DNA of 64,000 nucleotides from positions 248,001 to 312,000 of the IMG/VR virus record IMGVR_UViG_3300028676_000003. The stretch is one strand, 5' to 3'. Both the position numbers and the translations under genes were made by a program. The stretch's first letter is position 1. Each line of letters opens with the position of its first letter. Shown here piece by piece: positions 31,130-53,188 of the stretch. The notes below the pieces were generated by a model. It saw nothing but the letters and a program-made list of their open reading frames with translations. It ran no database searches and was not told where the DNA came from.

Positions 31130-31200
31130 GAAGCGTTCGTCTAGTGGACCAGGACACAGCCAATGGGGCTGAAACACAGGTTCGAGTCCTGTACGCTTTG
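31130..31200 (+). ncRNA. Glu-type tRNA body with a 5-nt anticodon loop
   Basis: GAAGCGT/ACGCTTT, D arm GTCTAGTGGACCAGGAC, CAGCC-AATGG-GGCTG. Confidence 0.65.
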
Positions 31201-31290
31201 CAATTAAGAGCACGTGGAAGTACGATAGCCCCCACAGTATAGAAAAAAACTAAGGTATCGTTGACTTCATGGTGGAAAGAAACCATATTT

Positions 31291-31362
31291 GGTCCTATCG
31301 TCTAGGGGTCAGGACACTAGGTTTTCAGCCTATAAACGAGGGTTCGATTCCCTCTAGGACTA
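31291..31362 (+). tRNA. tRNA-Glu(TTC)
   Basis: CTAGG-TTTTCAG-CCTAT. Confidence 0.85.
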
Positions 31363-31364
31363 CA

Positions 31365-31420
31365 AGAGACTGTTACTAATTTATAGGACTCCGAGTGAGG
31401 GGAAGCGTAGAATTAGAATT
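31365..31420 (+). repeat. inter-tRNA motif, copy 1 (AGACTGTT..TAATTYATAG...GCGTAGAATTA)
   Basis: Further copies at 52482-52545 and 52826-52881. Confidence 0.75.
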
Positions 31421-31423
31421 TTT

Positions 31424-31496
31424 GGAGCAGAGGTGTTGATGGTAACATACTCCCCTGTCACGGGATAGATTGAGGGTTCGACTCCCTTGTGCTCCG
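31424..31496 (+). tRNA. tRNA-Asp(GTC)
   Basis: CTCCC-CTGTCAC-GGGAT. Confidence 0.85.
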
Positions 31497-31652
31497 CAAG
31501 TCTATTAGGGTCGGCTGGAGACAAAGAGACTAAAATCATAAGGGTTCTAGTAGGGGTTGTGAACCGTATAATGACACATGACGTTGGGAAGTATAGCCAA
31601 AATGACACTCGGAAAGACGAAGGTTTGATGTTGAACCATATCAACATAATTC

Positions 31653-31725
31653 GGATGTGAGGTCAAATGGTTAAGATATCACCCTGTCACGGTGTTTGGA
31701 GCGGGTTCGAATCCCGTCACATCCG
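31653..31725 (+). tRNA. tRNA-Asp(GTC)
   Basis: Loop CTGTCAC, acceptor GGATGTG/CACATCC. Confidence 0.85.
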
Positions 31726-31731
31726 CAAATT

Positions 31732-31862
31732 GGAAATGTTACCCCAAAGCATGAGATTAATCAGAATGCGAGTCTATCAATGATAACGAAACCTTGATAG
31801 ATTTAGGAATAAGGGTACCTCTAATGGGATTTCGTTTGCAGGTTCGAGTCCTGCCATTTCCG
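31732..31862 (+). ncRNA. tRNA-like RNA with an expanded interior
   Basis: Perfect acceptor GGAAATG/CATTTCC and T arm GCAGG-TTCGAGT-CCTGC, with about 100 nt between and no clean anticodon arm. Confidence 0.55.
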
Positions 31863-31944
31863 CAATAATGTAACAAAAAAAATTGAGTTATGAAAACAAT
31901 GCGTAAATTCAGTCTCTTCTAAGGTCAAATCCTTACAAGAGAAA

Positions 31945-32646
31945 ATGAGTAAAAACACAAAAAAAGAAAGTTATAAGCCTTTTATTAAGCTTATTAACGA
32001 AAGAGCTAAAATTTGGAAGCTTATCGATGATTTAGGTTACATCGAGTTAGAAGAACCTATTCATCACGGTTACGATTCGTTTTTCGTATTAAGAGACGAT
32101 ATTTCAAGAAGAAAAGATGCTCCTTTATTAGAAGATTTGTTAAAGAATTATACTAGTGTTGCATGGTGTAGAAATAAAGACTTCATTGTCAAAAGAAGAG
32201 GTAAGAAAGAAAAAATTGAACCTAGTCTTGTTCACGTAAGTGTAGCGGCATATTTGTTATTTTCACCAAAGAAACAAGAGTTCTTTACCAAGCACTTCAT
32301 TAGAGGTTGGCATAGTGTTCGAGAAGTATATTGTCTTAATTTACCAAGACACTATTACGTAATCAAAAAGAAAAAAAGTTACATTACACATAGAAAGGTA
32401 ATGGATGCTCAATTGCAAAGTGACTTGGACTTGGTTTATGACCAAATCAACGAAATCACAGAAGTTTCAAACCCTTATAACAATCCTTGTGGTTGGGATG
32501 TAAGATTTTGGAACAAGGCTTCAAGAAGAAAAGATAATGTTATAACTAGCAATATCAAAAACCACTTCGATGGAGAACTTGATAGTGATTTATTAGAATA
32601 TGGTCTTTCTGAGAAAGCAAGACATGGAGCAAATTGGTATCGATAA
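31945..32646 (+). CDS. basic hypothetical protein
   Basis: 233-aa K/R-rich ORF. Confidence 0.65.
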   Translation: MSKNTKKESYKPFIKLINERAKIWKLIDDLGYIELEEPIHHGYDSFFVLRDDISRRKDAPLLEDLLKNYTSVAWCRNKDFIVKRRGKKEKIEPSLVHVSVAAYLLFSPKKQEFFTKHFIRGWHSVREVYCLNLPRHYYVIKKKKSYITHRKVMDAQLQSDLDLVYDQINEITEVSNPYNNPCGWDVRFWNKASRRKDNVITSNIKNHFDGELDSDLLEYGLSEKARHGANWYR

Positions 32647-32863
32647 AATACAGAAATGGTTAACGATGTGACCTCTATTTATAAGTCATGTTGTTGCCAT
32701 ATGTAACAAAATTTAGATAATAACTCGGAGACGAGCATGCGAAAGGTACCCACAGAGGGTCTAAGTCCGATTGATACGATACATAAGAACAGTTTCATAG
32801 GTTCCCAGCTGAATAAGGTAAGAGGGTATAAAATCATATCGTTCAAAATCTAAATTTTTTAAT

Positions 32864-32935
32864 GGCCCGTTCGTCTAGGGGTTAGGACGACTGGTTTTCG
32901 ACCAGTAAACAGGGGTTCGATTCCCCTACGGGCTG
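32864..32935 (+). tRNA. tRNA-Glu(TTC)
   Basis: ACTGG-TTTTCGA-CCAGT. Confidence 0.9.
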
Positions 32936-33034
32936 CAATAATTGGTTGACGAAAATACTCTTGCTGGAACAAGGGTAGAAGTAGTTGGATATTATATATT
33001 TGAAGCAAGGATTCCAGTCTGAGCGGAGAGTATC

Positions 33035-33105
33035 TTGGTACTAGTTTAATTGGAAAAAACGGGTGCGCTGAGCATTTAATATGGGTTCGAGTCCCATGTA
33101 TCGAA
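33035..33105 (+). ncRNA. tRNA-like RNA with a 5-nt anticodon loop
   Basis: TTGGTAC/GTATCGA, D stem GTTT/AAAC, GGTGC-GCTGA-GCATT, T arm ATGGG-TTCGAGT-CCCAT. Confidence 0.6.
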
Positions 33106-33334
33106 CTAATTTCAACTGAAGATAAATGTAAGTATCGTGCTTAATAACCACGGAAACCTTGGTGAGGGGTCCATAGTCATCACTTATATCATTGCTAAGA
33201 ATGAGTATTTATTGTAAGATATTTAAAACATCATTTATTCGGCCAATGTGGTTGATTTATAAGTGATTAAATAGGGTGTAGAGACGTTTGATGCTCTACT
33301 AGGTATTCCACTTAGAAATGGATTGAAATTTTAA

Positions 33335-33408
33335 GGGGTCTTAGCTCAGCTGGCTAGAGCATCTGCCTTGCACGTAGAAGGTCGTGGGTTCGACTCCCAC
33401 AGGCTCCA
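33335..33408 (+). tRNA. tRNA-Ala(TGC)
   Basis: TCTGC-CTTGCAC-GTAGA, G3:U70. Confidence 0.9.
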
Positions 33409-33533: not shown

Positions 33534-33618
33534 GGGAGTGTAGCTCAGTTGGTAGAGCAGGATGTATAGGAATGCATACTTTAAATCTGTGTCAATGGTT
33601 CGATTCCATTCACTCTTA
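33534..33618 (+). ncRNA. tRNA-like RNA with an enlarged anticodon arm
   Basis: Canonical D arm (AGCTCAGTTGGTAGAGC) and T arm; about 20 nt in the anticodon-loop position. Confidence 0.6.
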
Positions 33619-33627
33619 CAAAATATT

Positions 33628-34104: not shown

Positions 34105-34902
34105 ATGAGAACAAGAGTAGCACCGTCACCAACTGGAATTTTCCATTTGGGAACACTTAGAACAGCATTATTAAACTATTTACTGGCTAAGGCAAACGGT
34201 GGTGATTTCATTCTCCGTATTGATGATACCGATGTAGTTAGAAATGATGATAAATACATAGATTATATCTATGACCAAATGAAACACTTTGGCCTTAATC
34301 ATGACCTAACGTTTAAACAGTCAGATAGACTAGCACGATATGCAGAAGTTGCCAATAAGATTGGTTTTGCTTCACCTGATGGAATAAAGTTGAATATGGG
34401 TGACTATGATATGGTTATTCTTAGAACAAATGGATATCCAACATATAACTTTGCAAGTATTCTTGATGATTATGACTACGATATCACTGATTTTGTCAGA
34501 GGTGTAGACCACATCAACAATCTAGATAAACAAAAACATATTTGGGACTTGATTGCAAGTGTTTATGGTGATAAGCCTTTTCCAAATGTAATTCATGCTG
34601 GATTGTTATTTGATGGGAAGAGTAAGTTATCGAAAAGAAGCGGAAACGGAACGACAGCTGACTATGTTGACTTTGATAAGGATGCATTATTAAATTGGTT
34701 GTTTAAGATGGGTTGGTCTCATAAGGACCCGAATTTCGATAGAGATTTTCCTTTTTTACTGATGATTCAAATGATTGCTTTCTTTAATGATGGTAATATC
34801 ACGAAATCTAACTGTAAGATTGATAGACCAAAGCTTGATTTTTTGAATAAAAAACATAAAAACTTTAAGAAATTCAAAGAAAGTTTTGGTGAATTCAAAT
34901 AA
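34105..34902 (+). CDS. glutamyl-tRNA-synthetase-family catalytic domain only (GluRS/GluQ-like)
   Basis: RTRVAPSPTG.FHLGTLR, LRIDDTD, PTYNFA..DD..ITD.VRG.DH, KLSKR. 265 aa with no anticodon-binding domain. Confidence 0.85.
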   Translation: MRTRVAPSPTGIFHLGTLRTALLNYLLAKANGGDFILRIDDTDVVRNDDKYIDYIYDQMKHFGLNHDLTFKQSDRLARYAEVANKIGFASPDGIKLNMGDYDMVILRTNGYPTYNFASILDDYDYDITDFVRGVDHINNLDKQKHIWDLIASVYGDKPFPNVIHAGLLFDGKSKLSKRSGNGTTADYVDFDKDALLNWLFKMGWSHKDPNFDRDFPFLLMIQMIAFFNDGNITKSNCKIDRPKLDFLNKKHKNFKKFKESFGEFK

Positions 34903-36357: not shown

Positions 36358-36847
36358 ATTAGTTGTACCTTTGTAATGTAATAAAAATTAAACTATGAGA
36401 AATTTAAAAAAGCGATTTTTTCAATATTTGGCCGATTATATAATCGAGAGGTTACGATTCGAGTTGAATAGTCAATTCTATAATGAGAAGGTTTTTTACT
36501 TCTATTTAGAAATGGGAATATGTTTAGATTTTTATTGTACGGAGTATTTTAACGTAGAATTAGACTAAAAAAAAAATAAGTTTTAGTTGCAAGTTAAAAA
36601 AACGTTTCGTACCTTTGTTAAAGAAAAAGAAATTAGGTTAGGTTAGGTTAATAAATTTTGGTTTTTGGTTTTGAATTGCGTTTGTCACAAGTAAATGTTA
36701 ATTGATTTCGGTAAGATTAGCATTCGTCATGCTTGTGACGTTTTTAGATTGAATTAGGTTAAACTCGTTAGTTCTATTAGGGCCTGTCGTCATGGCAGAT
36801 AATCATAGGGAATTACGTCAGAACGTCCTACAGACGTAACTAACACT

Positions 36848-36919
36848 GGAGATGTAGCTCAGTTGGTAGAGCGGCCCCTCAAACGGGGTGTGTCGCAGGT
36901 TCGAACCCTGCCGTCTCCA
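36848..36919 (+). ncRNA. tRNA with a 6-nt anticodon loop
   Basis: Canonical body, GCCCC-TCAAAC-GGGGT. Confidence 0.7.
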
Positions 36920-37077
36920 CTTCTTCGATGAAAGGTGGTGCCTTCCTTTAAATCTCGGCATAGATTTTTGTTAGTTCAGCCTAGGTTCCAAGACCAAAAA
37001 ATGAATTGGTGTTTATTACTTTAAACCAAGTTAAAGAAAAGTATTCGGGTAACAACTTGGAAATTGTTACTCATCAG

Positions 37078-37893: not shown

Positions 37894-38529
37894 ATGGCAG
37901 TAACAAAACCAACAGCGAAAAAAGGAAGCGTAGCTACAGAGCAAATCGTAGGGCAAGCGGCTCAACAAATCACTAAAGCAGTAGCAGAATTAGCAGGAGC
38001 TACAAAAACTATCGAAACACTTGTTTCTCAATCTGAGGAATTAACACTTTTGGTAGCTAACAAAGAAGAACAAATTAAAGATTTAGATGTTCAATTCGCA
38101 GAAAAAGAGCGTCAATTAAACGTTAACTTGGATTTAAGTTTCAAAGCTAACGCTGAGAAAATGGTAAGCGAAAATTTATCTGCAAATGGTAAAGTAGCTA
38201 TCTCTTCTACAGAATTGAAAGAATTACGTTCTGAGTTAGAAACTGTAAAATCAGGTACAGAAGCATTAGTGAAAAAAGAGACTGCAATCATTGCGTCTAC
38301 GTTGAAATCTCAACACGAGAATGAAATCAAATTGATTCACTCTGAAAACAAAGCTATTGCCGCTGAAAACGCTGCTAAGTTAGGTTCGTTAACAAAACAA
38401 AACGAGTTCTTAGAAGAGCAAGTAACTAAATTGTACTTACAATTAGACGCTGAAAGAGCGGCTGGTACAGAAAGAGCAAAAGCTGGTTCAATCGGGAACA
38501 TCACTGTTGGAGAAACAGGTCGTAAGTAA
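37894..38529 (+). CDS. coiled-coil hypothetical protein
   Basis: A/E/K/L-rich helical protein; promoter at 37833. Confidence 0.7.
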   Translation: MAVTKPTAKKGSVATEQIVGQAAQQITKAVAELAGATKTIETLVSQSEELTLLVANKEEQIKDLDVQFAEKERQLNVNLDLSFKANAEKMVSENLSANGKVAISSTELKELRSELETVKSGTEALVKKETAIIASTLKSQHENEIKLIHSENKAIAAENAAKLGSLTKQNEFLEEQVTKLYLQLDAERAAGTERAKAGSIGNITVGETGRK

Positions 38530-38589: not shown

Positions 38590-38722
38590 AAAATTCGTTC
38601 AGCATAAAAAGCAATTCCAAACTTCGGGTCGTAGGTTCGAGTCCTACCCTCTCCACTAGGGTTATAATCGGAGAGGTAGCTCGGTCGGATTAGAGCAGAA
38701 GTCAGCAAAAAAAGCAATTTTG
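38590..38722 (+). ncRNA. circularly permuted tRNA (3' half precedes 5' half) flanked by 18-nt direct repeats
   Basis: 3' half ACTTC-GGGTC-GTAGG-TTCGAGT-CCTAC-CCTCTCC-A (38621-38655), 14-nt linker, 5' half GGAGAGG-TA-GCTC...GAGC-A-GAAGT (38670-38702). Confidence 0.75.
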
Positions 38723-38731: not shown

Positions 38732-38850
38732 ATAGTAGTCGTCTAGTGGACAAAGACACCGCCCCTGTATTCGTGTATGAGGTTCGACTCCTCTTTAGCA
38801 GTGGTGGTATGACGTAGGTGGAAACATTGGTTCAAATCCAATCTGCTGTA
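38732..38850 (+). ncRNA. Glu/Asp-type tRNA body with an ~50-nt insertion in the anticodon loop
   Basis: ATAGTAG/CTGCTGT, D arm GTCTAGTGGACAAAGAC; the CCGCC/GGTGG stem encloses a second T-arm (GAGG-TTCGACT-CCTC). Confidence 0.6.
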
Positions 38851-38884: not shown

Positions 38885-39013
38885 AAGATTATTTCAGCAA
38901 TCAAACAAAAAAAATCTATTTGAAAGAGAGCGGAGGGGTTCGACTCCCCATTTGTCTATAAGAGGTATGACAATTTGTTGTAACGGTAGCACTAATAAAA
39001 AAAATTAATCTTG
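38885..39013 (+). ncRNA. CAGCAA-stem element enclosing a permuted Gln(TTG)-like tRNA
   Basis: AAGATTA...CAGCAA, anticodon arm, GGGG-TTCGACT-CCCC, TTGTC-linker-GACAA, D arm TTGTAACGGTAGCA, closing TAATCTT-G. Confidence 0.6.
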
Positions 39014-39023: not shown

Positions 39024-39094
39024 ACTTCTGTCGTCTAAGTGTTAGGATGCCCTCGTTGTAGAGGGTGATAGTGGTTCAAATCCATTCGGAAGTG
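39024..39094 (+). ncRNA. Glu-type tRNA body with a 6-nt anticodon loop
   Basis: ACTTCTG/CGGAAGT, CCCTC-GTTGTA-GAGGG. Confidence 0.65.
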
Positions 39095-39240
39095 CAAATA
39101 CTGACCTCCACTTCAGTAATTATTTCGTTTTTTAGAGGTGGCTCCCTTTCCACAATTGTGGATATAACCAAAAATTGCTGTGGCAGACCACGGGCATCTG
39201 ATAGGTCAACTATCTATACAGGGGGCGAAACTAAATGTTT

Positions 39241-39292
39241 TAAAATAACTCATCATTTATTTGGTGGGTTATTTTTTTTTACGTACCTTTGT
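39241..39292 (+). terminator. terminator-promoter cassette closing array 2 (duplicated at 55357-55409)
   Basis: AATAACTCATCA-TTTATT-TGGTGGGTTATT, T-run, then TACCTTTGT. Confidence 0.75.
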
Positions 39293-46055: not shown

Positions 46056-46404
46056 TAGAGCCATTTGGTTCTTTGAGTTGATACTTGGTAAAGGAATAAG
46101 GGGCCTAGCATTTTGGCCCTTTATCTTTGTACCATCGACAACAGTCGTTGATGAGGTTCTGCTAAATCACGAACGTATTCATTTAAAGCAACAACTCGAA
46201 ATGCTGATTATACCGTTTTATATATGGTATTTGATTGCATTAAGGCGAAAGGGTTATATGGGTATTAGCTTTGAAAAAGAAGCATACGCCAATGAGAGAG
46301 ACTTAGGTTATTTAACCAAAAGAAAGAATTATTCATTTTTAAAATATCAAAATGAAAATAGAAATAAACAAAATAAAAACAGTACCAAAGGGTTTAGGTT
46401 TTAA
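46039..46404 (+). CDS. HExxH-motif protein
   Basis: LNHERIHLKQQ ... ISFEKEAY. Confidence 0.65.
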   Translation: MLIVSDRAIWFFELILGKGIRGLAFWPFIFVPSTTVVDEVLLNHERIHLKQQLEMLIIPFYIWYLIALRRKGYMGISFEKEAYANERDLGYLTKRKNYSFLKYQNENRNKQNKNSTKGFRF

Positions 46405-47527
46405 TTTCTGCGTTTACGGTGAACCATCTGAAGAAATTCAAAAATGGTGTAAGTATTGGGATTTTAAAACAGAACCATCAGGTCCATATACCAATATTAT
46501 CCTTACAGATGATGTTGACATTAAAAATATCTTTGTTGGTCCTAAGAAATACCATTATATTGATGGTTTTAGCCCAAATCTTAACAAGAACCTACATGTA
46601 GGTCACTTATCAAATCTTGTATTAGCAAATGCGTTCCAACACTTGGGTCTTGGAGATGAATTTATCTCGATATTTGGTGATACGCTAAATGGTGAGGTTA
46701 CCAAAGATGAGGCTTATTACAATTTCCTTAAAATGACCAAGTTTTTTGGTTATAAGGTTGATAAAGAGTATTTTGCTTCTGAAATGAAGCTTGATGAAAA
46801 GCTTTTAAAAGACGGCCAAGGTGACTATGAAGGTTCAAAGGTATTTGACTTAGAAGATGAACAAATCGTAGGTATTAAATCCAGCGGAGCAACAACATAC
46901 TTCTATCAAGACGTAGCACTAGCTAATGAATTGAGTGCTTCTACCTTGTATCTAACTGGCTTGGAGCAAGAAAATCATTTTAATTCGCTTAAGAAGTTAT
47001 TTCCAAATAACAATCATATCGGTCTTGGACTTGTTTATCTTGATGGTAAAAAGATGTCTAGCAGTGAAGGAAATATCATTTATATGAATGAGTTCATTCA
47101 TGGACTTATGGAAAAGTTTAATCATGATGCTGGTGTTGTAGCTAATATTATTATTGGACAAATCCTTAAATCTGAGCCAAAGTCAAAGAAAACAATTGAT
47201 TCTAGTCTTATAGATAATCCAAGATTATCATTAGGATTATACTTGAGCTACACGTTAGCACATGTTAAGAGTTGTGGTGTCACAACCAAGCAGATTTATA
47301 AGTATCAATCTAAAAAGTTACAATTTGCTGAATTAAGAGCTAAAACAAACTTATCACCAAATGTCTTATTTGATGAATTGGTGAGCCATTGTAAACATAT
47401 CAACGCTTTATATGAGACTCATTATATCAAGGGGAATGAAGAGAACATTGAGTTGTTTTCTAATTTGATTTCTGACTTGGAGTTGGGTATGTTGAGAGTG
47501 GGTATGTATTCAGTAGAAAAAGTTTAA
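46352..47527 (+). CDS. argS: arginyl-tRNA synthetase (compact)
   Basis: FSPNLNK.LHVGH, KS.G.TTY..QD, EQ..HF, KMSSSEG, YL.Y..A; C-term LGM...G. Confidence 0.85.
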   Translation: MKIEINKIKTVPKGLGFNFCVYGEPSEEIQKWCKYWDFKTEPSGPYTNIILTDDVDIKNIFVGPKKYHYIDGFSPNLNKNLHVGHLSNLVLANAFQHLGLGDEFISIFGDTLNGEVTKDEAYYNFLKMTKFFGYKVDKEYFASEMKLDEKLLKDGQGDYEGSKVFDLEDEQIVGIKSSGATTYFYQDVALANELSASTLYLTGLEQENHFNSLKKLFPNNNHIGLGLVYLDGKKMSSSEGNIIYMNEFIHGLMEKFNHDAGVVANIIIGQILKSEPKSKKTIDSSLIDNPRLSLGLYLSYTLAHVKSCGVTTKQIYKYQSKKLQFAELRAKTNLSPNVLFDELVSHCKHINALYETHYIKGNEENIELFSNLISDLELGMLRVGMYSVEKV

Positions 47528-48627: not shown

Positions 48628-49035
48628 ATGAAAAAATTTTTATTAATTGGATTATTCTTAATCTTTAGTTTACCTTCGTTTTCACAGGCATTAGCAAATG
48701 GCTATTACTACAAATCGGATATCAAAGTATATTCAAGTGGTACATCAAACACTTATACATATCACTTCTATGTGAATGCAAGTGGTGAGATTAGACAAAT
48801 TGATTTTGCTAAAAACCAATACATGTCATTCAAGACATATGGTACTGTATCTAACGCTCAATCAAGTGCTTATACTTGGGCCAATGATGGTGGTATTTGG
48901 TCAGAAACACAAACATTTGTGTTTACCAAAGACAAATCAACTGGTGACCTTAGTGTCTTCTTGATGAGAGTAGTACAAAATGAGGGTCAAGACCCTTGGC
49001 AAAGCTACGGTGTTGGAGTTGTTGAAAAACTCTGA
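48628..49035 (+). CDS. secreted hypothetical protein
   Basis: Signal peptide ending FSQ. Confidence 0.6.
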   Translation: MKKFLLIGLFLIFSLPSFSQALANGYYYKSDIKVYSSGTSNTYTYHFYVNASGEIRQIDFAKNQYMSFKTYGTVSNAQSSAYTWANDGGIWSETQTFVFTKDKSTGDLSVFLMRVVQNEGQDPWQSYGVGVVEKL

Positions 49036-49098
49036 GGGAGCTTAGTATTAAGAAAAATATAGTTGGTTATCAATTCTTACTTAGTAGAATTGAAACAA

Positions 49099-49315
49099 GG
49101 GGAATCGTTGTAAGGTAAGCATGTACTGTGGAGAACGGTATGCAATCAAGACGAGTATCAATAATAGGTGAGGATGGTGTACAACAGAGCCATTAACGAT
49201 TGATACTGGTGGAGATAGTTCAGAAGATACCTAAGAAATCACTGGTTAGCGCAATCAGAATGAACTAAGGGATGATATGGGTGAAAGCTTGGGGGTTCGA
49301 GTCCTTCATTCCCTA
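49099..49315 (+). ncRNA. ~215-nt RNA with a tRNA-like acceptor and T arm
   Basis: GGGGAAT/ATTCCCT-A and GGGGG-TTCGAGT-CCTTC, with a multi-hairpin interior. Confidence 0.55.
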
Positions 49316-49387
49316 CTAGAAAAAAAATAAAAAATAATTGGTAAAACACTTGACTTGTAAAGAAAATTGTCGTACCTTTGTAGTATA

Positions 49388-50195
49388 TTAATAAGATGTT
49401 GGTTCGCCCATGCTTTTTAACATAAGGCCGCTTATGGTCTTCAGGATAAACATAGTGATATGTAGAAAGCGATTTAGCGGAAGCAAGATTGCGTTGGGAA
49501 TTTATTACCAATCCGAGTAAGCGATGATAAACGCAGTGTTTATGTAAAGGCAACAAGAGACAAAATCTGTTGGAGTTGGAAGTAAACATTATAGCCCAAA
49601 TTTTGATTCATGGGTTATTGAGTACGAAAGTATAATAGAGGTTTATCAGGATTTGGTGAATAACTGTAAAAGGGGAATAAGCTGGGTCCAGTATTTAGAT
49701 TATGGTGTAGCTGAAAGGTGATATTAATCGAAGGTACCATGTTCGAGAGAGCATATCGGGGTGTCGTTAGCTGGGCTACTCAAAAGGTAGTACGTTAGCA
49801 AATCTGAGGACACATCCTGAACTGAAATGAATCGATGCAATTTATTTAGGTTTTTAACCTGAAATATCTTTTAAGAAAAGGAAATTTTATAAAAAGCAAA
49901 AGTTCCTCAGAACATGATTTGAAAAATGAGTTATACTGTTGTAAAATACAGTTGTTGCTAGGCCGCAAGCCAAAGTGACAAAATAAAGTAAGTAGTTCTA
50001 AGCTAATAGCCCGCAAGCTATGCAGACTCGCAAGGTCAGTCGGATGAAAATGGAGTTTATATAGAATCATGTAGTGATTGCAGAATCGTATATCTGTCTC
50101 ATTGTTGACTATTCCTGTAGCAATATAGGTGTGTGTAACAAACCGAAAGGTTTCAAAACGTCAACAGTATAGCTGAACACTCAGGCGACTACAAA
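49388..50195 (+). ncRNA. large structured ncRNA, GOLLD-like
   Basis: About 800 nt with no plausible + ORF and its own promoter (49350-49381). Many GNRA-capped hairpins (GCAA, GAAA) and a CTCAAAAGG element, next to tRNAs. Family assignment is from memory only. Confidence 0.55.
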
Positions 50196-50253
50196 ATTTT
50201 GGGGATAACCTTTAATCGGTTCATAAGGCGTAAAACCTTATATCCCCACACAT

Positions 50254-50326
50254 TCCGTGTTAGAGCAGTCAGGTAGCTCGCTCCCGTGTGAGGGAGAGGT
50301 CAGGGGTTCGAATCCTTTACACGGTA
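50254..50326 (+). ncRNA. initiator-like tRNA body with a 6-nt anticodon loop
   Basis: 1:72 mismatch, D stem GAGC/GCTC, CTCCC-GTGTGA-GGGAG. Confidence 0.65.
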
Positions 50327-50542
50327 CTAATTTTTACTAGACATATTAATTAAATTCGGGAGCAATACATATAGTATTGAATAGGTGGAAACCCTTATGC
50401 TCCCACTAGGCTTCGTAATTAGGAAATATGGATGCGGTTAAAAGAAACGACCAAAGATAAGGTTTCACGGCAAAAGGCTCTATTCGTTAACCAGCGAGCT
50501 TTTACTTATCTTTGGAAATTTCAAAAAAAAATGACAAAAGGC

Positions 50543-50574
50543 TTGCTTTTTACAAAAATAGTTAGTACCTTTGT
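50543..50574 (+). promoter_or_regulatory. promoter upstream of leader 3
   Basis: TTG ... TACCTTTGT; ATATTTAT at 50625. Confidence 0.8.
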
Positions 50575-50665
50575 ATAAGAAATAAAAAAATAAACAGAAA
50601 AACAAAACTTTTGCTAAAAGCAATATATTTATAATAAACGTAGAAATACACAACAAACAGAAATT

Positions 50666-50773
50666 ATGACAACAAGTACCACATATCAAACGCAAAAACA
50701 ACAACCTAAAGGCGGGAAGCCTTATGGCTTGGCTGGGTGTGTCAACAACTTGTTTGACTTAGTTACAATATAA
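50666..50773 (+). CDS. leader peptide 3 (MTTSTTYQTQKQQPKGGKPYGLAGCVNNLFDLVTI), Thr/Tyr/Gln/Lys/Pro/Gly-rich attenuator
   Basis: 35-aa ORF; codons 2-21 are 19/20 T, Y, Q, K, P or G. Confidence 0.85.
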   Translation: MTTSTTYQTQKQQPKGGKPYGLAGCVNNLFDLVTI

Positions 50774-50797
50774 TTAGTAGTAATACTGATTTTGTAG

Positions 50798-50832
50798 ACC
50801 CAGCTTAATGTAAAAATTAGGCTGGGTTTTTT
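50798..50832 (+). terminator. intrinsic terminator/attenuator of array 3
   Basis: ACCCAGCTTAAT-loop-ATTAGGCTGGGT plus T-run. The leader carries an identical GGCTGGGT at 50731-50738. Confidence 0.85.
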
Positions 50833-50837
50833 CATTT

Positions 50838-50910
50838 CGGGGGATAGCTTATATGGTAAAGCACTGACCGTTGGGGTCAGGAGAATGAGGTTCGAGTACT
50901 CATCTACCGA
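50838..50910 (+). tRNA. Pro-type tRNA body with an atypical anticodon loop (CGTTGGG)
   Basis: C1:G72, A73; CTGAC-CGTTGGG-GTCAG lacks U33. Confidence 0.6.
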
Positions 50911-51024
50911 CAAACACAAAACGGGTTAACCTCTGCGAACAGAAAGTACGAGGATGGAACAATTGGAAAGATATCGCTAGTTGCAAAGGGTTCGATTCCC
51001 TATAACCTGACAAAAGAATTAATC

Positions 51025-51315
51025 ATGAGTAAAGGAAATTGTGAATTATGTGAACGAGAGAAGGAATTGACCTTTCATCACCTAATACCTCAAATCAACC
51101 ACTCGAAGAATGCCTTTCAAAGGTTATTCAGTAAAGAGGATATGAAAACAAGAGGTCTTATGTTATGTAGAGAGTGTCATTCAATGATTCATCGAACGCT
51201 AGACAACAAAACACTCGGATTAGAGTACAATACAAAAGAATTATTACTCGGACATGAAGGAATCTTCAAGTTTGTAGAATGGGTTAAAAAACAAAACAAA
51301 AAAGTAAAAAAATAG
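51025..51315 (+). CDS. HNH-family protein
   Basis: CELC, TFHHLIP, LCRECHSMIH. Confidence 0.75.
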   Translation: MSKGNCELCEREKELTFHHLIPQINHSKNAFQRLFSKEDMKTRGLMLCRECHSMIHRTLDNKTLGLEYNTKELLLGHEGIFKFVEWVKKQNKKVKK

Positions 51316-51387
51316 AACAAATGAAAAATATTAAACGTATAAAGAATAAACAGTAACCACCTTCAAATCATGAGGGTGATATGATAT

Positions 51388-51458: not shown

Positions 51459-51477
51459 CAAGTTTTAATAAACGAAT

Positions 51478-51550
51478 GCCCTCGAAACATTGCTGGCGAT
51501 GTACTCCGCTTTTAACGGAGGAATAATTGGTTCGATTCCAATCGGGGGTA
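51478..51550 (+). tRNA. tRNA-Lys(TTT)
   Basis: CTCCG-CTTTTAA-CGGAG. Confidence 0.85.
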
Positions 51551-51569
51551 CAAGACGAAAGTCGAATAC

Positions 51570-51644
51570 TCTCCTATGGCTGACTGGGTAAAGCACCATA
51601 CTTTTAATATGGCATCAATGTCGGTTCGAACCCGACTGGGAGAA
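51570..51644 (+). tRNA. tRNA-Lys(TTT)
   Basis: CCATA-CTTTTAA-TATGG. Confidence 0.85.
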
Positions 51645-51706
51645 CAAATTAAGTTTTTAACCTTTACTTTTGTTTAAAAGCGCATATTATTGTAATAAAA
51701 TTTATT

Positions 51707-52147
51707 ATGAAAATATGTGGAACATGTAAAGTACCGAAATCCGAAGAAGATTTCAACAAGAATAAAAGCAAACCAGATGGTTTAAATAGCATTTGTAGAG
51801 AATGTAGTAACAAACGGTCTAAACGATATTATACTGAGAATAAAGAACATCATATTGGTGTTATTAAAGATAGGAAGGTTAAAACATTAATCGATACTAG
51901 AACAAAAATTTTTGAGTATTTTAAAGAAAACCCGTGTATTGATTGTGGTGAAACAGACCCAATAGTACTAGAATTTGACCATCGAGACGATGTTATCAAA
52001 GAGAGAAATATTGCTGATTTAGTCGGAAATAGTTGTTCTTGGACGATGATTAAGAAAGAGATTGACAAGTGTGATGTAAGGTGTGCAAATTGCCACAGAA
52101 GAAGAACAGCAATCCAACAAGGTTGGTATAAAGGAGTTATATTATGA
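51707..52147 (+). CDS. HNH homing-endonuclease-like protein
   Basis: N-term CxxC Zn finger, CIDCG....LEFDH, KC...CANCHR. Confidence 0.8.
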   Translation: MKICGTCKVPKSEEDFNKNKSKPDGLNSICRECSNKRSKRYYTENKEHHIGVIKDRKVKTLIDTRTKIFEYFKENPCIDCGETDPIVLEFDHRDDVIKERNIADLVGNSCSWTMIKKEIDKCDVRCANCHRRRTAIQQGWYKGVIL

Positions 52148-52400
52148 CAGAACAAGAAAAGCACATAGCAGATAGTATGACATTATTTGCCGCTAACATA
52201 GCAGATTTTGAAGTAGGTGATTTAGTAAAAGAGGCGAATGGTATCGTGTCCAAGATAACGAACAAAACCATCAACTCTATTGAAGTGGAAATTGACAAGC
52301 TACCACTTAAAAAAAATGCGTCAAAAGAAAATATCGGGATTAAAGCAAGACAATGGTTTACCATGGAAAATTTTAATCGTAGATTTAAAAAGTAATTATT

Positions 52401-52476
52401 CGGGTGGTATAGGAGCCAGGTTTATCTAGTCGCACTTGGACTGCGAATCACGTGGGTTCGAATCCCACTCACCCGA
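52401..52476 (+). tRNA. tRNA-Pro(TGG)
   Basis: TCGCA-CTTGGAC-TGCGA. Confidence 0.85.
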
Positions 52477-52481
52477 CGAGA

Positions 52482-52545
52482 AGAGACTGTTATTAATTCA
52501 TAGAACACCATACTTAGTAAGTACTGGAAGCGTAGAATTAAAAAT
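52482..52545 (+). repeat. inter-tRNA motif, copy 2
   Basis: AGAGACTGTTATTAATTCATAG...GAAGCGTAGAATTAA. Confidence 0.75.
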
Positions 52546-52547
52546 TA

Positions 52548-52623
52548 CGAGATGTGGACTAATTGGCTAAGTCGCTTGCTTTGGGAGCAAGACATCGTGC
52601 AGGTTCGAGTCCTGTCATCTCGA
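52548..52623 (+). tRNA. tRNA-Pro(TGG)
   Basis: CTTGC-TTTGGGA-GCAAG. Confidence 0.9.
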
Positions 52624-52745
52624 CATACTGGGTTTTGATACCGATTTACCGTTAGGAAACGGAGCGTGAAGGGGTTCGTCAAACAAACTCTGCTCCCGAA
52701 ACAGAATTGAAGTGGGGTATGACGGATGCAGAGAGAGGCATATAT

Positions 52746-52817
52746 GCGGGAGTAGCTCAATGGTAGAGTTCCTGATTTCCAATCAGGTTGTTGCGAGTTC
52801 GAGCCTCGTCTTCCGCT
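52746..52817 (+). tRNA. tRNA-Gly(TCC)
   Basis: CCTGA-TTTCCAA-TCAGG. Confidence 0.9.
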
Positions 52818-52825
52818 CGAAGATA

Positions 52826-52881
52826 AGACTGTTGCTAATTCATAGGGTACCAAGGTAAAAACTGCGTAGAATTAGAAAATT
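52826..52881 (+). repeat. inter-tRNA motif, copy 3
   Basis: AAGACTGTTGCTAATTCATAG...TGCGTAGAATTAG. Confidence 0.75.
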
Positions 52882-52955
52882 GCGACCATCGCCTAGTTGG
52901 TATGGCATCTGACTTCCAATCAGAAATAGGGCGGGTTCGAGACCCGCTGGTCGCT
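52882..52955 (+). tRNA. tRNA-Gly(TCC)
   Basis: TCTGA-CTTCCAA-TCAGA. Confidence 0.9.
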
Positions 52956-52963
52956 CAAAATAT

Positions 52964-53038
52964 TGGCCTATGGTGTAATTGGCAACACTACTGTTTTTGG
53001 TGCAGTCATTCAAGGTTCGAGTCCTTGTGGGCCAACCA
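52964..53038 (+). tRNA. tRNA-Gln(TTG)
   Basis: ACTGT-TTTTGGT-GCAGT, encoded CCA. Confidence 0.9.
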
Positions 53039-53042
53039 ATAT

Positions 53043-53113
53043 TGGGGATTGATGTAATGGTAGCATACTTGGTTTTGAGCCAAACTGTATAAGTTCGACC
53101 CTTATATCCCTAA
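53043..53113 (+). tRNA. tRNA-Gln(TTG)
   Basis: CTTGG-TTTTGAG-CCAAA. Confidence 0.8.
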
Positions 53114-53116
53114 CTA

Positions 53117-53188
53117 TGTCAAGTAGTTTAATTGAGAAAACTCCCTGCGTTGGGCGGGGCGATTTGGGTTTGAATCCCGATTTGACAG
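53117..53188 (+). tRNA. Gln-like tRNA with an atypical anticodon loop (CGTTGGG)
   Basis: TGTCAAG/TTTGACA-G; CCCTG-CGTTGGG-CGGGG. Confidence 0.55.

What the first reader, a model, noticed from the sequence alone, without database searches (positions are those of the whole stretch)
31130..53188. Recurrent tRNAs with intact bodies but aberrant anticodon loops
5-nt loops: 31130 (AATGG) and 33035 (GCTGA). 6-nt loops: 36848 (TCAAAC), 39024 (GTTGTA) and 50254 (GTGTGA). Loops lacking U33: 50838 and 53117 (both CGTTGGG). Acceptor, D and T arms stay well paired while the defect is confined to the loop, unlike random decay. Options: nuclease-resistant amino-acid donors charged by the anticodon-blind GluRS-like enzyme (two have Glu-type bodies), frameshift or rescue tRNAs, processing spacers, or scars of cleavage and repair.
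Basis: partly seen in the sequence, partly recalled or inferred. Interest (0 to 1): 0.65.

Follow-up and report, generated by a model that had tools for sequence, protein, structure and literature searches.

The report
Conserved non-decoding tRNA look-alikes in phage
A huge uncultivated phage carries, among its 40 tRNA genes, a set of tRNA-shaped RNA genes whose anticodon loop is closed down to 4-6 bases; related phages keep the same closed loops, so these are preserved tRNA mimics of unknown job that cannot read codons, not dying genes.

Summary
All seven genes have the stated loops. Two independent assemblies are identical over 24105-57524, which holds all seven, so these are not assembly errors. 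50838 and 53117 are better read as a 6-bp stem plus a 5-nt GUUGG loop.

Six of the seven have positional orthologues in related huge phages (65-83% protein identity), and these also carry 4-6-nt loops. 50838 shares its arm only with a 92%-identical relative. Among orthologues the would-be anticodon changes (CUG, CAU, UGA), while acceptor, D and T stems are kept by compensatory changes: 40 of 59 variable pairs, with 2.4% of cells unpaired. They are therefore selected, non-decoding tRNA-like RNAs.

The bodies derive from Glu, Gln, Pro and Phe-like tRNAs. They sit among other tRNA mimics: a GOLLD-like RNA ends about 65 nt before 50254 in three genomes, and 39024 closes a conserved cluster that starts with a YrlA-like permuted tRNA. 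RNA-repair genes lie nearby.

"Intact bodies" is only partly right. Three of the seven fall below Rfam's tRNA threshold, and 50838 has a broken T arm.

Their function is unproven. I favour tRNA-shaped ligands or decoys that are matured like tRNAs. RNase P/Z processing modules and amino-acid carriers for the anticodon-blind GluRS-like enzyme remain open. Decay, frameshift decoding and repair scars are disfavoured.

The parts
31130..31201 (+). Glu-type tRNA-like (D arm GTCT/GGAC, variable AAAC) with a 5-bp anticodon stem and a 5-nt loop AAUGG. It lies between two tRNA-Glu genes.
   Evidence: Searches give the structure. It scores below Rfam's 29 bits. Positional orthologues L163:605-676 (loop GUCGGA) and L158:477-548 (loop AUGGGA) lie between the same two Glu orthologues. 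It is absent in L164, L165 and L007.
33035..33106 (+). Gln-type tRNA-like (U1-A72, A73) with a 6-bp stem closed by C-G and a pentaloop GCUGA.
   Evidence: Rfam 40.2 bits. Orthologues are L158:2579 (GCAUA), L164:4319 = L165:1605 (GUGAA) and L163:3851 (CCGAAA).
   Evidence: Rfam 45.3 bits. Related genes L164:6793, L164:4543 and L158:1759 all carry C-AGGAA-G.
36848..36920 (+). Phe-like body with a 5-bp stem and a 6-nt loop UCAAAC, 158 nt upstream of tRNA-Phe 37078. A promoter-like TACCTTTG box lies at 36610.
   Evidence: Rfam 57 bits. Family members are L163:6641, L164:6506, L165:4382 and L167:1001 (CUAAAA), L167:1288 (CCAACA) and L007:15473 (stem plus UUAG tetraloop, before tRNA-Phe).
38621..38702 (+). 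YrlA-like, circularly permuted tRNA-like. The ends pair as the 'anticodon' stem ACTTC/GAAGT. The order is T arm, then an acceptor stem CTCTCC/GGAGAG closed by a 15-nt loop, then the D arm.
   Evidence: Rfam YrlA 29.3 bits, E = 0.031. The sequence was read and folded. Matches in relatives are stronger: L163:8085-8210 at 49.9 bits, L154:3970-4075 at 40.4 bits, L156:7254-7370 at 36 bits. All are below the gathering score of 69 bits.
38732..38850 (+). 119-nt Glu-like tRNA-like carrying a second T-arm-like hairpin (GAGG TTCGACT CCTC) where the anticodon loop should be.
   Evidence: Rfam tRNA 36.7 bits; sequence. The orthologue is L158:7145-7261. Similar 117-123-nt hits occur in L155 and L151.
39024..39095 (+). 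Glu-type tRNA-like with a 6-nt loop GUUGUA. It is the last member of the conserved cluster YrlA-like, then 119-nt tRNA-like, then this gene. A terminator-like hairpin follows at 39242-39275.
   Evidence: below Rfam's 29 bits. Orthologues are L159:1967 (AUUGGA), L158:7442 and L163:8462 = L167:2913 (UUGGU).
49756..50187 (+). GOLLD-like RNA, 3' conserved domain. It probably starts near the TACCTTTG box at 49373.
   Evidence: RF02032 over the full model, 95.6 bits, E = 1e-23, below the gathering score of 150. The same element occurs in L162:10210-10624 (100.1 bits) and L161:8909-9331 (77.6 bits).
50254..50327 (+). tRNA-like with a 6-nt loop GUGUGA, 66 nt downstream of the GOLLD-like domain.
   Evidence: Rfam 43.3 bits. 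Orthologues lie at the same spacing: L161:9397 (65 nt) and L162:10689 (64 nt). L168:9901 and L166:12304 are further orthologues. Loops are GUUUGA, GUUUGA, CAUACA and a short A-rich loop, with compensatory stem changes.
50838..50911 (+). Pro-type body (C1-G72, A73) with a 6-bp stem and a GUUGG loop. The T arm is irregular (G53.A61). It starts right after the terminator-like hairpin 50796-50829.
   Evidence: Rfam 32.4 bits. In L168 (92% nt identity) the anticodon arm is identical but the T and D loops differ. In L161 the same position holds a 92-nt tRNA-Pro(UGG) with a normal 7-nt loop.
50922..51010 (+). 89-nt tRNA-like (acceptor, T arm, 7-bp arm with a 10-nt loop). It is almost invariant between relatives.
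   Evidence: It differs at one base from L168 and is about 90% alike in L161, with a 9-nt gap.
53117..53189 (+). Third copy of a tRNA-Gln triplet (U1-A72, G73) with a 6-bp stem closed by C-G and a loop GUUGG. Its T-loop is UUUGAAU.
   Evidence: below Rfam's 29 bits. The orthologue L162:12333 follows Gln-Gln with C-GUGGA-G and compensatory acceptor changes. L161 has a diverged copy without a T-loop. L016 has three normal Gln genes; whether the third is an orthologue is unclear.
31006..31060 (+). D-armless mini tRNA-like: a 5-bp acceptor, a hairpin CTCCC-GTGAA(G)-GGGAG and a canonical T arm.
34105..34902 (+). GluRS-like protein of 265 aa. It has the catalytic core with HIGH-type (HLGT) and KMSKS-type (KLSKR) motifs, no anticodon-binding domain, and an internal deletion.
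   Evidence: Pfam tRNA-synt_1c, 5e-45. NCBIfam gltX_bact matches at profile positions 2-86 and 172-317 of 470, and scores better than GluQRS.

Best explanation
Shown: the seven genes, and at least six more nearby, are real genes for tRNA-shaped RNAs that cannot decode, and selection maintains them.

Each arose from an ordinary phage tRNA gene and usually still sits beside its parent isoacceptor:
- Glu: 31130 and 39024.
- Gln: 33035 and 53117.
- Pro: 50838.
- Phe-like: 36848.
- Unassigned: 50254.

In each, the anticodon arm has become a closed hairpin with a 4-6-nt loop, often sealed by an extra C-G pair. There is no U33, and the 'anticodon' is not conserved among orthologues.

Inferred: they are transcribed in long operons together with tRNAs and ORFs. 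RNase P and 3'-end enzymes cut them out, and they are completed to CCA, because C74 but not CCA is encoded in all of them. They then persist as L-shaped RNAs. The closed loop keeps them off the ribosome's decoding site and out of reach of anticodon-loop nucleases.

I think they most likely act through their shape, as ligands or decoys for proteins that recognise tRNA bodies. They would then belong to the same tRNA-centred conflict and repair toolkit as their neighbours: the GOLLD-like RNA, the YrlA-like RNA, three RNA ligases, a kinase-phosphatase and a nucleotidyltransferase. At least 50254 may instead, or also, be a 3' module of the GOLLD-like RNA. The target proteins are unknown.
For: Structure and reality:
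- establish the structures.
- Two assemblies are identical over 24105-57524.

Orthologues with short loops:
- 31130 family: AAUGG, GUCGGA, AUGGGA.
- 33035 family: GCUGA, GCAUA, GUGAA, CCGAAA.
- 36848 family: UCAAAC, CUAAAA (four copies), CCAACA, and a UUAG tetraloop.
- 39024 family: GUUGUA, AUUGGA, UUGGU.
- 50254 family: GUGUGA, GUUUGA (two copies), CAUACA.
- 53117 family: GUUGG, GUGGA.
- 50838: identical arm in L168.

Selection on the cloverleaf:
- 40 of 59 variable stem pairs show compensatory double changes, and only 12 of 496 cells are non-canonical.
- The covariation score exceeds all 500 shuffles and all slid controls for two families.
- L168, at 92% nt identity, has a whole base pair inserted in the 50254 anticodon stem.
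- L154 and L155 orthologues differ at 11 of 74 positions. Four of these form two compensatory acceptor pairs, the rest lie in loops, and the closed arm is identical.

Non-decoding:
- If the closing pair is opened, the 33035 family would read CUG, CAU or UGA.

Context:
- A GOLLD-like RNA lies at constant spacing before 50254 in three genomes.
- The YrlA-like cluster before 39024 is conserved.
- RNA-repair genes are nearby.
- All 40 tRNAs, including the aberrant ones, have C74 but no encoded CCA.
- Operon layout comes from promoter-like TACCTTTG boxes, 29 observed against 2.7 expected.
- Unrelated phage tRNA islands also hold closed-arm tRNA-likes.
Against: - No expression data exist, and no binding partner has been identified.
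- No Ro60/TROVE or RtcB gene was found among the window ORFs scanned. These were most ORFs of 120 aa or more, scanned with Pfam, NCBIfam or PHROGs. About 300 kb of the genome was not examined.
- Loop sequences drift within families. That argues against a decoy for a sequence-specific anticodon nuclease.
- Some family members are missing in some relatives. The 31130 family is absent in L164, L165 and L007, so the genes are dispensable.
- 50838 has a degenerate T arm and a normal-loop counterpart in L161. The 53117-like copy in L161 has lost its T-loop. Part of the set may therefore be decaying.
- Family assignment for a few members rests on position and similarity only: L158:477, L167:1288, L007:15473 and the 33534 family. 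If these are paralogues, their 'compensatory' changes say less.
Confidence: 0.45

Rival explanations
1. They are processing and stability modules. The tRNA shape recruits RNase P and 3'-end enzymes to cut long operon transcripts, to define the ends of neighbouring RNAs, and perhaps to stabilise them. The clearest case would be the 3' end of the GOLLD-like RNA upstream of 50254, much as mascRNA defines the 3' end of MALAT1. The excised tRNA-like would be a by-product that must not decode.
For: - 50254 lies 64-66 nt behind the GOLLD-like domain in three genomes, and the 24 nt before it are nearly invariant.
- The genes lie inside operons with few promoter boxes, so processing is needed.
- Loop sequence is free to vary while the shape is kept.
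- The literature reports tRNAs in and beside GOLLD, including a pseudo-tRNA inside the gene (PMC6582537; bioRxiv 10.1101/2024.12.08.627333).
Against: - Most of the seven sit directly beside canonical tRNAs that already provide RNase P and Z sites.
- RNase P needs only the acceptor and T arms (established knowledge). Yet D stems and anticodon stems are also kept by compensatory changes.
- The short-loop architecture itself is conserved, which a mere cleavage signal would not require.
Confidence: 0.25
2. One reading: they are nuclease-proof, non-decoding amino-acid carriers. They would be charged by the phage's anticodon-blind minimal synthetases (GluRS-like 34105-34902, LeuRS-like 23618-24886) and used for a non-ribosomal transfer.
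For: - The GluRS-like protein keeps its catalytic motifs but lacks the anticodon-binding domain.
- Four or five of the mimics have Glu- or Gln-type bodies, the natural substrates of a non-discriminating GluRS.
- The Glu-type D helix (U11-A24, U13.G22) is kept in 31130 and 39024 (read from the drawings).
- C74 is encoded, so a CCA end is likely.
- A closed loop would prevent miscoding by a mischarged RNA.
Against: - The discriminator base varies within the 31130, 36848, 39024 and 50254 families.
- Other bodies are Pro-type (50838) and Phe-like (36848).
- L163, L164 and L165 span the syntenic interval and keep three or all four of the 31130, 33035, 36848 and 39024 families (31130 is missing in L164 and L165), but carry no GluRS-like gene there.
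- Conversely, L003-L006 and L012-L015 have the GluRS-like gene with hardly any tRNAs nearby: one tRNA-Trp in L003 and one dubious call on the opposite strand in L012.
- No aminoacyl-transferase candidate was seen in the window.
Confidence: 0.15
3. They are ordinary tRNA pseudogenes: redundant duplicates in a duplication-prone array that contains homing endonucleases, decaying slowly.
For: - The array has many duplicates and two homing-endonuclease genes.
- Three of the seven fall below Rfam's threshold, and 50838 and 53117 have damaged T or D loops.
- Some families are missing in some relatives.
- The 50838 position holds a normal tRNA-Pro in L161.
- The 53117-like copy in L161 lacks a T-loop.
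Against: - Short loops persist in orthologues across phages whose proteins are only 65-83% identical, while stems change by compensation.
- 50838 and 53117 share the loop CGTTGGG although their bodies are only background-level similar to each other; each one's closest window tRNAs are 0.65-0.69 identical.
- Neutral decay would hit stems in proportion to their length.
Confidence: 0.08
4. They are decoders of an unusual kind: frameshift-promoting or rescue tRNAs with non-standard loops.
For: Altered anticodon-loop size is known to shift the reading frame in engineered and suppressor tRNAs (established knowledge). 36848 can be drawn with a 7-nt CUCAAAC loop.
Against: - The loops are 4-6 nt, not 8. 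U33 is absent, and C-G closing pairs shrink the loop.
- Loop sequences differ between orthologues.
- The window's ORFs read through in the standard code on one strand.
Confidence: 0.02

Closest known systems
Bacterial and phage Y RNA-like RNAs (YrlA, Rfam RF02553; D. radiodurans Yrn1), as in Chen et al. 2014, PMC4201824
   Same: Both are non-decoding tRNA mimics with D and T arms and tertiary-pair nucleotides. Both are found in phages and linked to RNA repair. Yrn1's 'anticodon arm' has a 5-bp stem and a 6-nt loop. A YrlA-like permuted element lies 320 nt upstream of 39024.
   Different: Y RNAs are permuted, or carry a Ro60-binding helix, and are encoded next to Ro60. The seven genes have ordinary tRNA topology with free acceptor ends. 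No Ro60 gene was found in the window. The YrlA-like matches are all below Rfam's gathering score.
Nuclease-insensitive phage tRNAs (van den Berg et al. 2023, PMC10264068)
   Same: Both are phage-encoded tRNAs whose anticodon loops differ from the host's in ways that should block anticodon nucleases. Both occur in tRNA-rich phages.
   Different: Those tRNAs keep a 7-nt loop and still decode, replacing cleaved host tRNAs. The genes here cannot decode, so they cannot replace anything in translation.
tRNAs and pseudo-tRNAs linked to GOLLD RNA in phage and mycobacterial tRNA islands (PMC6582537; bioRxiv 10.1101/2024.12.08.627333)
   Same: GOLLD lies in tRNA islands together with an HNH endonuclease. 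tRNAs or a pseudo-tRNA can lie within or beside it. Here a GOLLD-like RNA is followed by 50254, and an HNH gene lies at 51707-52147.
   Different: Here the partner is a conserved 6-nt-loop tRNA-like at a fixed 64-66 nt behind the 3' domain, not in the linker. The GOLLD match is below the gathering score. Only one of the seven is GOLLD-linked.
mascRNA, the tRNA-like RNA cut from the 3' end of MALAT1 (from my own knowledge, not checked here)
   Same: It has a cloverleaf with an atypical anticodon loop, is cut out by RNase P and Z, and receives CCA. Its main role is end formation of the upstream long RNA.
   Different: It is eukaryotic and a single locus. Nothing is known here about processing.
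tRNA-Other of Bacillus cereus, a pseudo-tRNA with a regulatory role (PMC3399842, title and abstract seen)
   Same: It is a tRNA-like gene that does not act in translation yet has a phenotype.
   Different: It is chromosomal, a single gene, and acts in a different way. The paper's details were not checked here.
Ordinary tRNA pseudogenes
   Same: They have a defective anticodon loop and some low covariance-model scores.
   Different: Orthologues here keep the defect and keep the stems through compensatory changes.

Membership tests
Canonical elongator tRNA (Rfam RF00005) | 7-nt anticodon loop with U33 and a purine at position 37 | tested here: not met
   Loops are 5 or 6 nt, or 7 nt with G33 or A33 and a pairable C32-G38, in all seven.
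Canonical elongator tRNA (Rfam RF00005) | Cloverleaf with 7-bp acceptor, D, anticodon and T stems | tested here: met
   5 of 7 have all stems paired. There are 3 mismatches in total, in 50254 and 50838. Covariation supports the stems in the families.
Canonical elongator tRNA (Rfam RF00005) | Score at or above the gathering threshold (29 bits) | tested here: inconclusive
   Four pass: 36848 at 57, 50254 at 43.3, 33035 at 40.2 and 50838 at 32.4 bits. Three fail: 31130, 39024 and 53117.
Canonical elongator tRNA (Rfam RF00005) | Anticodon conserved among orthologues | tested here: not met
   Central loop triplets differ among orthologues in every family with two or more members.
Canonical elongator tRNA (Rfam RF00005) | Aminoacylation and use on the ribosome | not testable with these tools
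   This needs charging assays and tRNA-seq.
YrlA / Y RNA-like (RF02553) | Permuted tRNA-like domain: ends in the 'anticodon' helix and the acceptor stem closed by a loop | tested here: not met
   The seven have normal 5'/3' acceptor ends. The neighbouring element 38621-38702 does meet this feature.
YrlA / Y RNA-like (RF02553) | Score at or above the gathering threshold (69 bits) | tested here: not met
   The best score for the neighbouring element is 29.3 bits in the window and 49.9 bits in L163.
YrlA / Y RNA-like (RF02553) | Encoded next to a Ro60 (TROVE) gene | tested here: not met
   No TROVE hit among the window ORFs scanned. The flanking ORFs are coiled-coil or membrane proteins. The rest of the 368-kb genome was not examined.
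GOLLD RNA (RF02032), for the neighbour of 50254 | Match to the conserved 3' domain at or above the gathering score (150 bits) | tested here: inconclusive
   The match covers the full model at 95.6 bits, E = 1e-23, below gathering. It is conserved in L161 and L162.
GOLLD RNA (RF02032), for the neighbour of 50254 | Location in a phage tRNA island | tested here: met
   The association is described in the literature.
tRNA pseudogene (neutral decay) | Stems accumulate unpaired substitutions, and the defect is not shared by diverged orthologues | tested here: not met
   2.4% of cells are non-canonical and 40 of 59 variable pairs are compensatory. Short loops are shared by orthologues. 50838 is the weakest case.

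The most novel reading that the evidence does not exclude
Huge phages of this clade, probably infecting Bacteroidota, maintain a dedicated repertoire of 'anticodon-closed' tRNA mimics. Each mimic copies the body of one isoacceptor (Glu, Gln, Pro, Phe-like). They would form a new class of RNA-based counter-defence or regulators. In one version they are decoys that soak up host proteins attacking or sensing tRNA bodies. In another they are orthogonal, non-decoding aminoacyl carriers for the phage's minimal anticodon-blind synthetases. Either way they would work together with the GOLLD and Y-RNA-like RNAs encoded beside them.
Probability: 0.3. Interest if true: 0.85.

Novelty: new variant of a known kind. 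Interest (0 to 1): 0.62.

Why it matters
The purpose of phage tRNA islands is still debated: codon supply, or escape from tRNA-cutting defences. This locus shows that part of such an island is not there for decoding at all.

About a quarter of the tRNA-shaped genes in this window are conserved RNAs with a sealed anticodon arm, roughly 13 of some 46. They sit next to two other enigmatic RNA classes that lack a known function: GOLLD, which forms nanocages, and Y-RNA-like tRNA mimics.

This gives a concrete, testable set of small RNAs, each with natural variants. They can be used to ask what tRNA mimicry does during infection, and what GOLLD and Y-like RNAs interact with.

It also matters for annotation. 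Such genes are currently reported as odd tRNAs with nonsense anticodons ('His-ATG', 'Gln-CTG', undetermined) or as pseudogenes, and they inflate tRNA counts for huge phages.

Tried and rejected
- **Sequencing or assembly error: rejected.** Two contigs from different metagenomes are identical over 24105-57524.
- **Close cultured relatives: none.** Megablast of 30000-54600 against GenBank phages gave only a 57-nt tRNA-Ala match. The conserved 371-aa protein hits one unannotated 462-kb uncultured phage at 42% identity, and that 41-kb locus has no tRNAs.
- **Relatives in IMG/VR:** searches with the GluRS-like and ArgRS-like proteins and two tRNA patterns gave only distant relatives. A pattern for the 50254 family was written too strictly and found only the window's own contigs. 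Closer relatives came from homologues of ORF 40195-41310.
- **A Ro60-like partner next to the YrlA-like cluster: not found.**
  - ORF 40195-41310 is a membrane plus coiled-coil protein.
  - ORF 37894-38529 is a coiled-coil protein.
  - ORF 39411-40187 has no family.
  - I therefore ran no structure predictions.
- **Sigma-70 promoter scan: no enrichment**. A Bacteroidota-type -7 box, TACCTTTG, is strongly enriched instead.
- **Motif ATTTCAGCAA near the small RNAs:** only mildly enriched, and not followed up.
- **G-rich loops as Shine-Dalgarno mimics: dropped.** The phage's genes have no Shine-Dalgarno sequences.
- **The 50254 loop pairing with the conserved CACAC just upstream: rejected.** The loop changes (GUGUGA to GUUUGA) but the leader does not.
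- **MAFFT alignments of the anticodon arms:** unreliable because of indels. Stems were therefore segmented per sequence.
- **ARAGORN isotype labels for the aberrant genes (His, Gln, Leu):** artefacts of forcing a 7-nt loop.

Full report
**Source and setting**

The window is 34.6% G+C, and all long ORFs lie on the + strand. Positions 24105-57524 are identical to two IMG/VR contigs from different metagenomes: IMGVR_UViG_3300028676_000003 (368,549 bp) and IMGVR_UViG_3300030838_000001 (274,025 bp). It is therefore part of an uncultivated huge phage.

GenBank phages hold no close relative.

The host is probably a member of Bacteroidota; this is an inference from the known Bacteroides promoter consensus.
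- Genes lack Shine-Dalgarno sequences.
- The box TACCTTTG occurs 29 times against 2.7 expected, mostly on the + strand in intergenic DNA.

ARAGORN finds 40 tRNA genes between 20.8 and 54.5 kb. Rfam finds 37 at gathering score.

Genes around and between the tRNAs include:
- an Rnl1-like, an Rnl2-like and a third RNA ligase;
- a protein with an HD domain plus a P-loop kinase domain;
- a 2H phosphoesterase and a nucleotidyltransferase;
- a PARP-like protein and an ADP-ribosylglycohydrolase;
- minimal LeuRS-, GluRS- and ArgRS-like proteins;
- HNH and GIY-YIG endonucleases.

**Check of the observation**

| Gene | Anticodon stem | Loop |
|---|---|---|
| 31130 | CAGCC/GGCTG | AATGG |
| 33035 | GGGTGC/GCATTT | GCTGA |
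| 36848 | GCCCC/GGGGT | TCAAAC |
| 39024 | CCCTC/GAGGG | GTTGTA |
| 50254 | CTCCC/GGGAG | GTGTGA |
| 50838, 53117 | see below | CGTTGGG |

In 50838 and 53117 the C32-G38 pair can form, so the natural fold is a 6-bp stem with a GTTGG pentaloop.

Loops flagged as aberrant make up 7 of 40 tRNAs here, against 17 of 344 distinct tRNAs from other phage tRNA islands (p = 0.007).

"Intact bodies" needs qualifying.
- Stems are almost fully paired.
- 31130, 39024 and 53117 score under Rfam's 29 bits.
- 50838 has G4.A69 and G53.A61 mismatches.
- 53117 has T-loop UUUGAAU and no GG in its D-loop.
- 50254 has U1.U72.

Body types, read from acceptor and D-arm features:
- Glu: 31130 and 39024.
- Gln (U1-A72): 33035 and 53117.
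- Pro (C1-G72, A73): 50838.
- Phe-like: 36848.
- Unassigned: 50254.

ARAGORN's isotype names for these genes are artefacts of forcing a 7-nt loop.

**Relatives**

IMG/VR gave distant syntenic phages (L007, L149-L156, L146, L095, L104). Homologues of ORF 40195-41310 led to closer ones in Logan, ENA and JGI assemblies (L157-L168). Over 49000-51365, L168 is 91.6% identical in DNA and L161 is 78% identical.

| Family | Loops in orthologues (locus) | Notes |
|---|---|---|
| 31130 | AAUGG (window), GUCGGA (L163), AUGGGA (L158) | All between the same two tRNA-Glu orthologues |
| 33035 | GCUGA, GCAUA (L158), GUGAA (L164, L165), CCGAAA (L163) | All closed by C-G |
| 36848 | UCAAAC, CUAAAA (L163, L164, L165, L167), CCAACA (L167), UUAG tetraloop (L007) | L007 copy lies before tRNA-Phe |
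| 39024 | GUUGUA, AUUGGA (L159), UUGGU (L158, L163, L167) | |
| 50254 | GUGUGA, GUUUGA (L168, L161), CAUACA (L162), short A-rich loop (L166) | |
| 53117 | GUUGG, GUGGA (L162) | Both are the third gene after two normal tRNA-Gln |
| 50838 | Identical arm in L168 | L161 has a 92-nt tRNA-Pro(UGG) with a normal loop at that position, so 50838 is the youngest and weakest case |

**Selection**

I segmented each family member into tRNA parts.
- Of 59 variable stem pairs in acceptor, D and T stems, 40 show compensatory double changes and 12 show one-sided changes that keep pairing.
- Only 12 of 496 cells are non-canonical.

Formal counts support this.
- 50254 family: 95% of cells are paired. The covariation score is 0.257 against 0.142 in shuffles (0 of 500 reach it), and it beats all slid controls.
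- 33035 family with L154 and L155: 0.524 against 0.244, again 0 of 500.

Two close comparisons are telling.
- L168 carries a whole extra base pair in the 50254 anticodon stem, and all of its other differences preserve structure.
- The L154 and L155 orthologues (7-bp stem plus AGAC tetraloop) differ at 11 of 74 positions. Four form two compensatory acceptor pairs, the rest lie in loops, and the closed arm is identical.

In contrast, the would-be anticodon is not conserved. The 33035 family would read CUG, CAU or UGA. These RNAs are under selection for shape, not for decoding.

**Context that changes the picture**

An Rfam scan in E-value mode shows two things.
- A GOLLD-like RNA at 49756-50187: full model, 95.6 bits, E = 1e-23, below gathering.
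- A weak YrlA-like match at 38623-38700.

The GOLLD-like RNA, followed 64-66 nt later by a 50254-family tRNA-like, recurs in L161 and L162. A TACCTTTG box at 49373 would give an RNA of about 800 nt, the size reported for GOLLD.

The YrlA-like element (38621-38702) is a true permuted tRNA-like, not a tRNA dimer. Its ends pair as an 'anticodon' stem, and its acceptor stem is closed by a loop.

It heads a cluster that is conserved in L158 and, with a shorter middle element, in L163; L159 holds a related one:
1. the YrlA-like element;
2. a roughly 118-nt tRNA-like with a T-arm-like hairpin in place of the anticodon loop (38732-38850);
3. a 39024-family gene.

Further tRNA-likes in the window:
- 33534-33619, with an AGGA tetraloop (its family carries C-AGGAA-G);
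- 31006-31060, which lacks a D arm;
- 50922-51010, 89 nt and nearly invariant.

Unrelated phage tRNA islands also contain closed-arm tRNA-likes.

No Ro60/TROVE or RtcB gene was found among the window ORFs scanned. The ORFs flanking the cluster are coiled-coil or membrane proteins.

**How it most likely works**

Shown: these are conserved genes for tRNA-shaped RNAs that cannot decode.

Inferred:
- They are co-transcribed with tRNAs and ORFs. Promoter boxes are few, and terminator-like hairpins lie at 39242-39275 and 50796-50829.
- The tRNA maturation enzymes cut them out.
- They are completed to CCA. All 40 tRNA genes, aberrant ones included, encode C74 but, with one exception (tRNA-Gln 52964), not CCA.

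I think the sealed loop serves to keep a tRNA-shaped RNA off the decoding site and safe from anticodon-loop nucleases. The RNAs would then act through shape, as ligands or decoys for tRNA-recognising proteins in the tRNA attack-and-repair conflict that the neighbouring genes point to. The target is unknown.

Loop sequences drift, which argues against mimicry of a sequence-specific nuclease site.

**Rivals**

1. Processing and end-forming modules. This is a good fit for 50254 behind GOLLD. It is a weaker fit for the others, which sit beside real tRNAs and conserve more structure than RNase P needs.
2. Amino-acid carriers for the anticodon-blind GluRS-like enzyme.
   - For: the enzyme is real and keeps its catalytic motifs, and Glu- and Gln-type bodies fit.
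   - Against: discriminator bases vary, and Pro- and Phe-like bodies do not fit.
   - Against: L163, L164 and L165 keep the mimics with no GluRS-like gene in the syntenic interval.
3. Decay. This fits only the damaged features of 50838 and 53117, and losses in some lineages.
4. Frameshift or rescue decoding, and repair scars. Both are rejected.

**Comparison with what is known, and novelty**

The closest known things are:
- Y-RNA tRNA-like domains. Yrn1 even has a 6-nt 'anticodon loop' (PMC4201824).
- GOLLD-linked tRNAs and pseudo-tRNAs.
- Nuclease-insensitive phage tRNAs, which still decode (PMC10264068).
- mascRNA (from memory).

The seven fail the defining tests of canonical tRNA, of YrlA and of neutral pseudogenes.

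Five literature searches found no description of conserved families of normal-topology tRNA-likes with closed anticodon arms in phage tRNA islands. Absence from this library does not prove novelty.

I rate it a new variant of a known kind (tRNA mimics).

Noticed in passing
window 49756-50187 (perhaps from about 49390): GOLLD-like RNA: RF02032 full model, 95.6 bits, E = 1e-23, below the gathering score of 150. It is conserved in L161, L162, L166 and L168, and a TACCTTTG promoter-like box lies at 49373.
   Followed up: partly
window 38621-38702; L163:8085-8210; L154:3970-4075; L156:7254-7370; L158:7018-7142: YrlA-like, circularly permuted tRNA-like RNAs, all below Rfam's gathering score. They head a conserved cluster of small tRNA-derived RNAs. 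No Ro60 gene lies nearby.
   Followed up: partly
window 38732-38850; L158:7145-7261; L155:8028-8144(-) and 12435-12553(-); L151:89-211(-): tRNA-likes of about 118 nt with a second T-arm-like hairpin inserted where the anticodon loop should be.
   Followed up: partly
window 50922-51010: 89-nt tRNA-like (Pro-type acceptor, T arm, 7-bp arm with a 10-nt loop). It differs at one base from L168 and is about 90% alike in L161 with a 9-nt gap, so it is more conserved than its surroundings.
   Followed up: partly
window 31006-31060 and about 38926-38990: Two further tRNA-derived elements. The first is a D-armless mini tRNA-like with a C-GTGAA-G hairpin. The second is a second permuted T-arm/acceptor element.
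   Followed up: no
window 50330-50540 and 50666-50829: A stretch of about 200 nt after 50254 is highly conserved in L168 and L161 and may be structured RNA. It is followed by a conserved 35-codon ORF (50666-50773) with its own TACCTTTG box (50566) and a strong terminator-like hairpin (50796-50829) ending 8 nt before 50838.
   Followed up: no
window 21566-21640, 21749-21823, 22197-22271: Three 75-nt tRNAs with Leu anticodons (CAA, UAA, UAG) lack the long variable arm of class II tRNA-Leu. The relative L007 has 84-87-nt class II versions. A 422-aa minimal LeuRS-like gene (23618-24886) follows the Leu cluster.
   Followed up: no
window 23618-24886, 34105-34902, 46352-47527: Minimal aminoacyl-tRNA-synthetase-like genes. 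The LeuRS-like gene appears to lack most of the editing and C-terminal parts, judged from which profile regions match. The GluRS-like gene lacks the anticodon-binding domain. The ArgRS-like similarity is weak.
   Followed up: partly
window 737-1861, 5826-6872, 18630-19637, 58294-58992, 60979-62091, 62822-63394, 8998-10284, 17468-18412: A dense RNA-repair and ADP-ribose gene set: Rnl1-like, Rnl2-like and a third RNA ligase, a nucleotidyltransferase, an HD plus P-loop kinase protein, a 2H phosphoesterase (Acb1-like), a PARP-like protein and an ADP-ribosylglycohydrolase.
   Followed up: no
whole window, e.g. 709, 8973, 15978, 29719, 34909, 36366, 36610, 39284, 41520, 48588, 49373, 50566, 55401: TACCTTTG, a Bacteroidota-type -7 promoter box, occurs 29 times against 2.7 expected. 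The genes have no Shine-Dalgarno sequences. The host is probably Bacteroidota.
   Followed up: partly
all 40 tRNA genes of the window: Every tRNA gene encodes C at position 74, usually followed by A, but not CCA (one exception, 52964). Several orthologues in relatives encode a full CCA.
   Followed up: no
L158:1151, L163:1847, L164:3354, L165:640: Relatives share a tRNA-Asp(GUC) with loop CUGUCUA, which has U37 instead of a purine. L164:3965 is a tRNA-Glu with U37.
   Followed up: no
window 51707-52147 and 54500-55219: An HNH and a GIY-YIG (SegE-like) endonuclease gene lie inside the tRNA array. Copies of the GIY-YIG gene sit at different places in the arrays of relatives (L007, L104, L111, L096, L163).
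   Followed up: no
L119:4918-4995 = L122:7135-7212; L120:12754-12840; L165:5911-5983: Closed-arm tRNA-likes occur outside the seven families: in unrelated phage tRNA islands (L119/L122, 8-bp stem plus GUCAA; L120, 9-bp stem plus tetraloop) and one more in the relative L165 (6-bp stem plus CUUU). The phenomenon is therefore wider than this clade.
   Followed up: no
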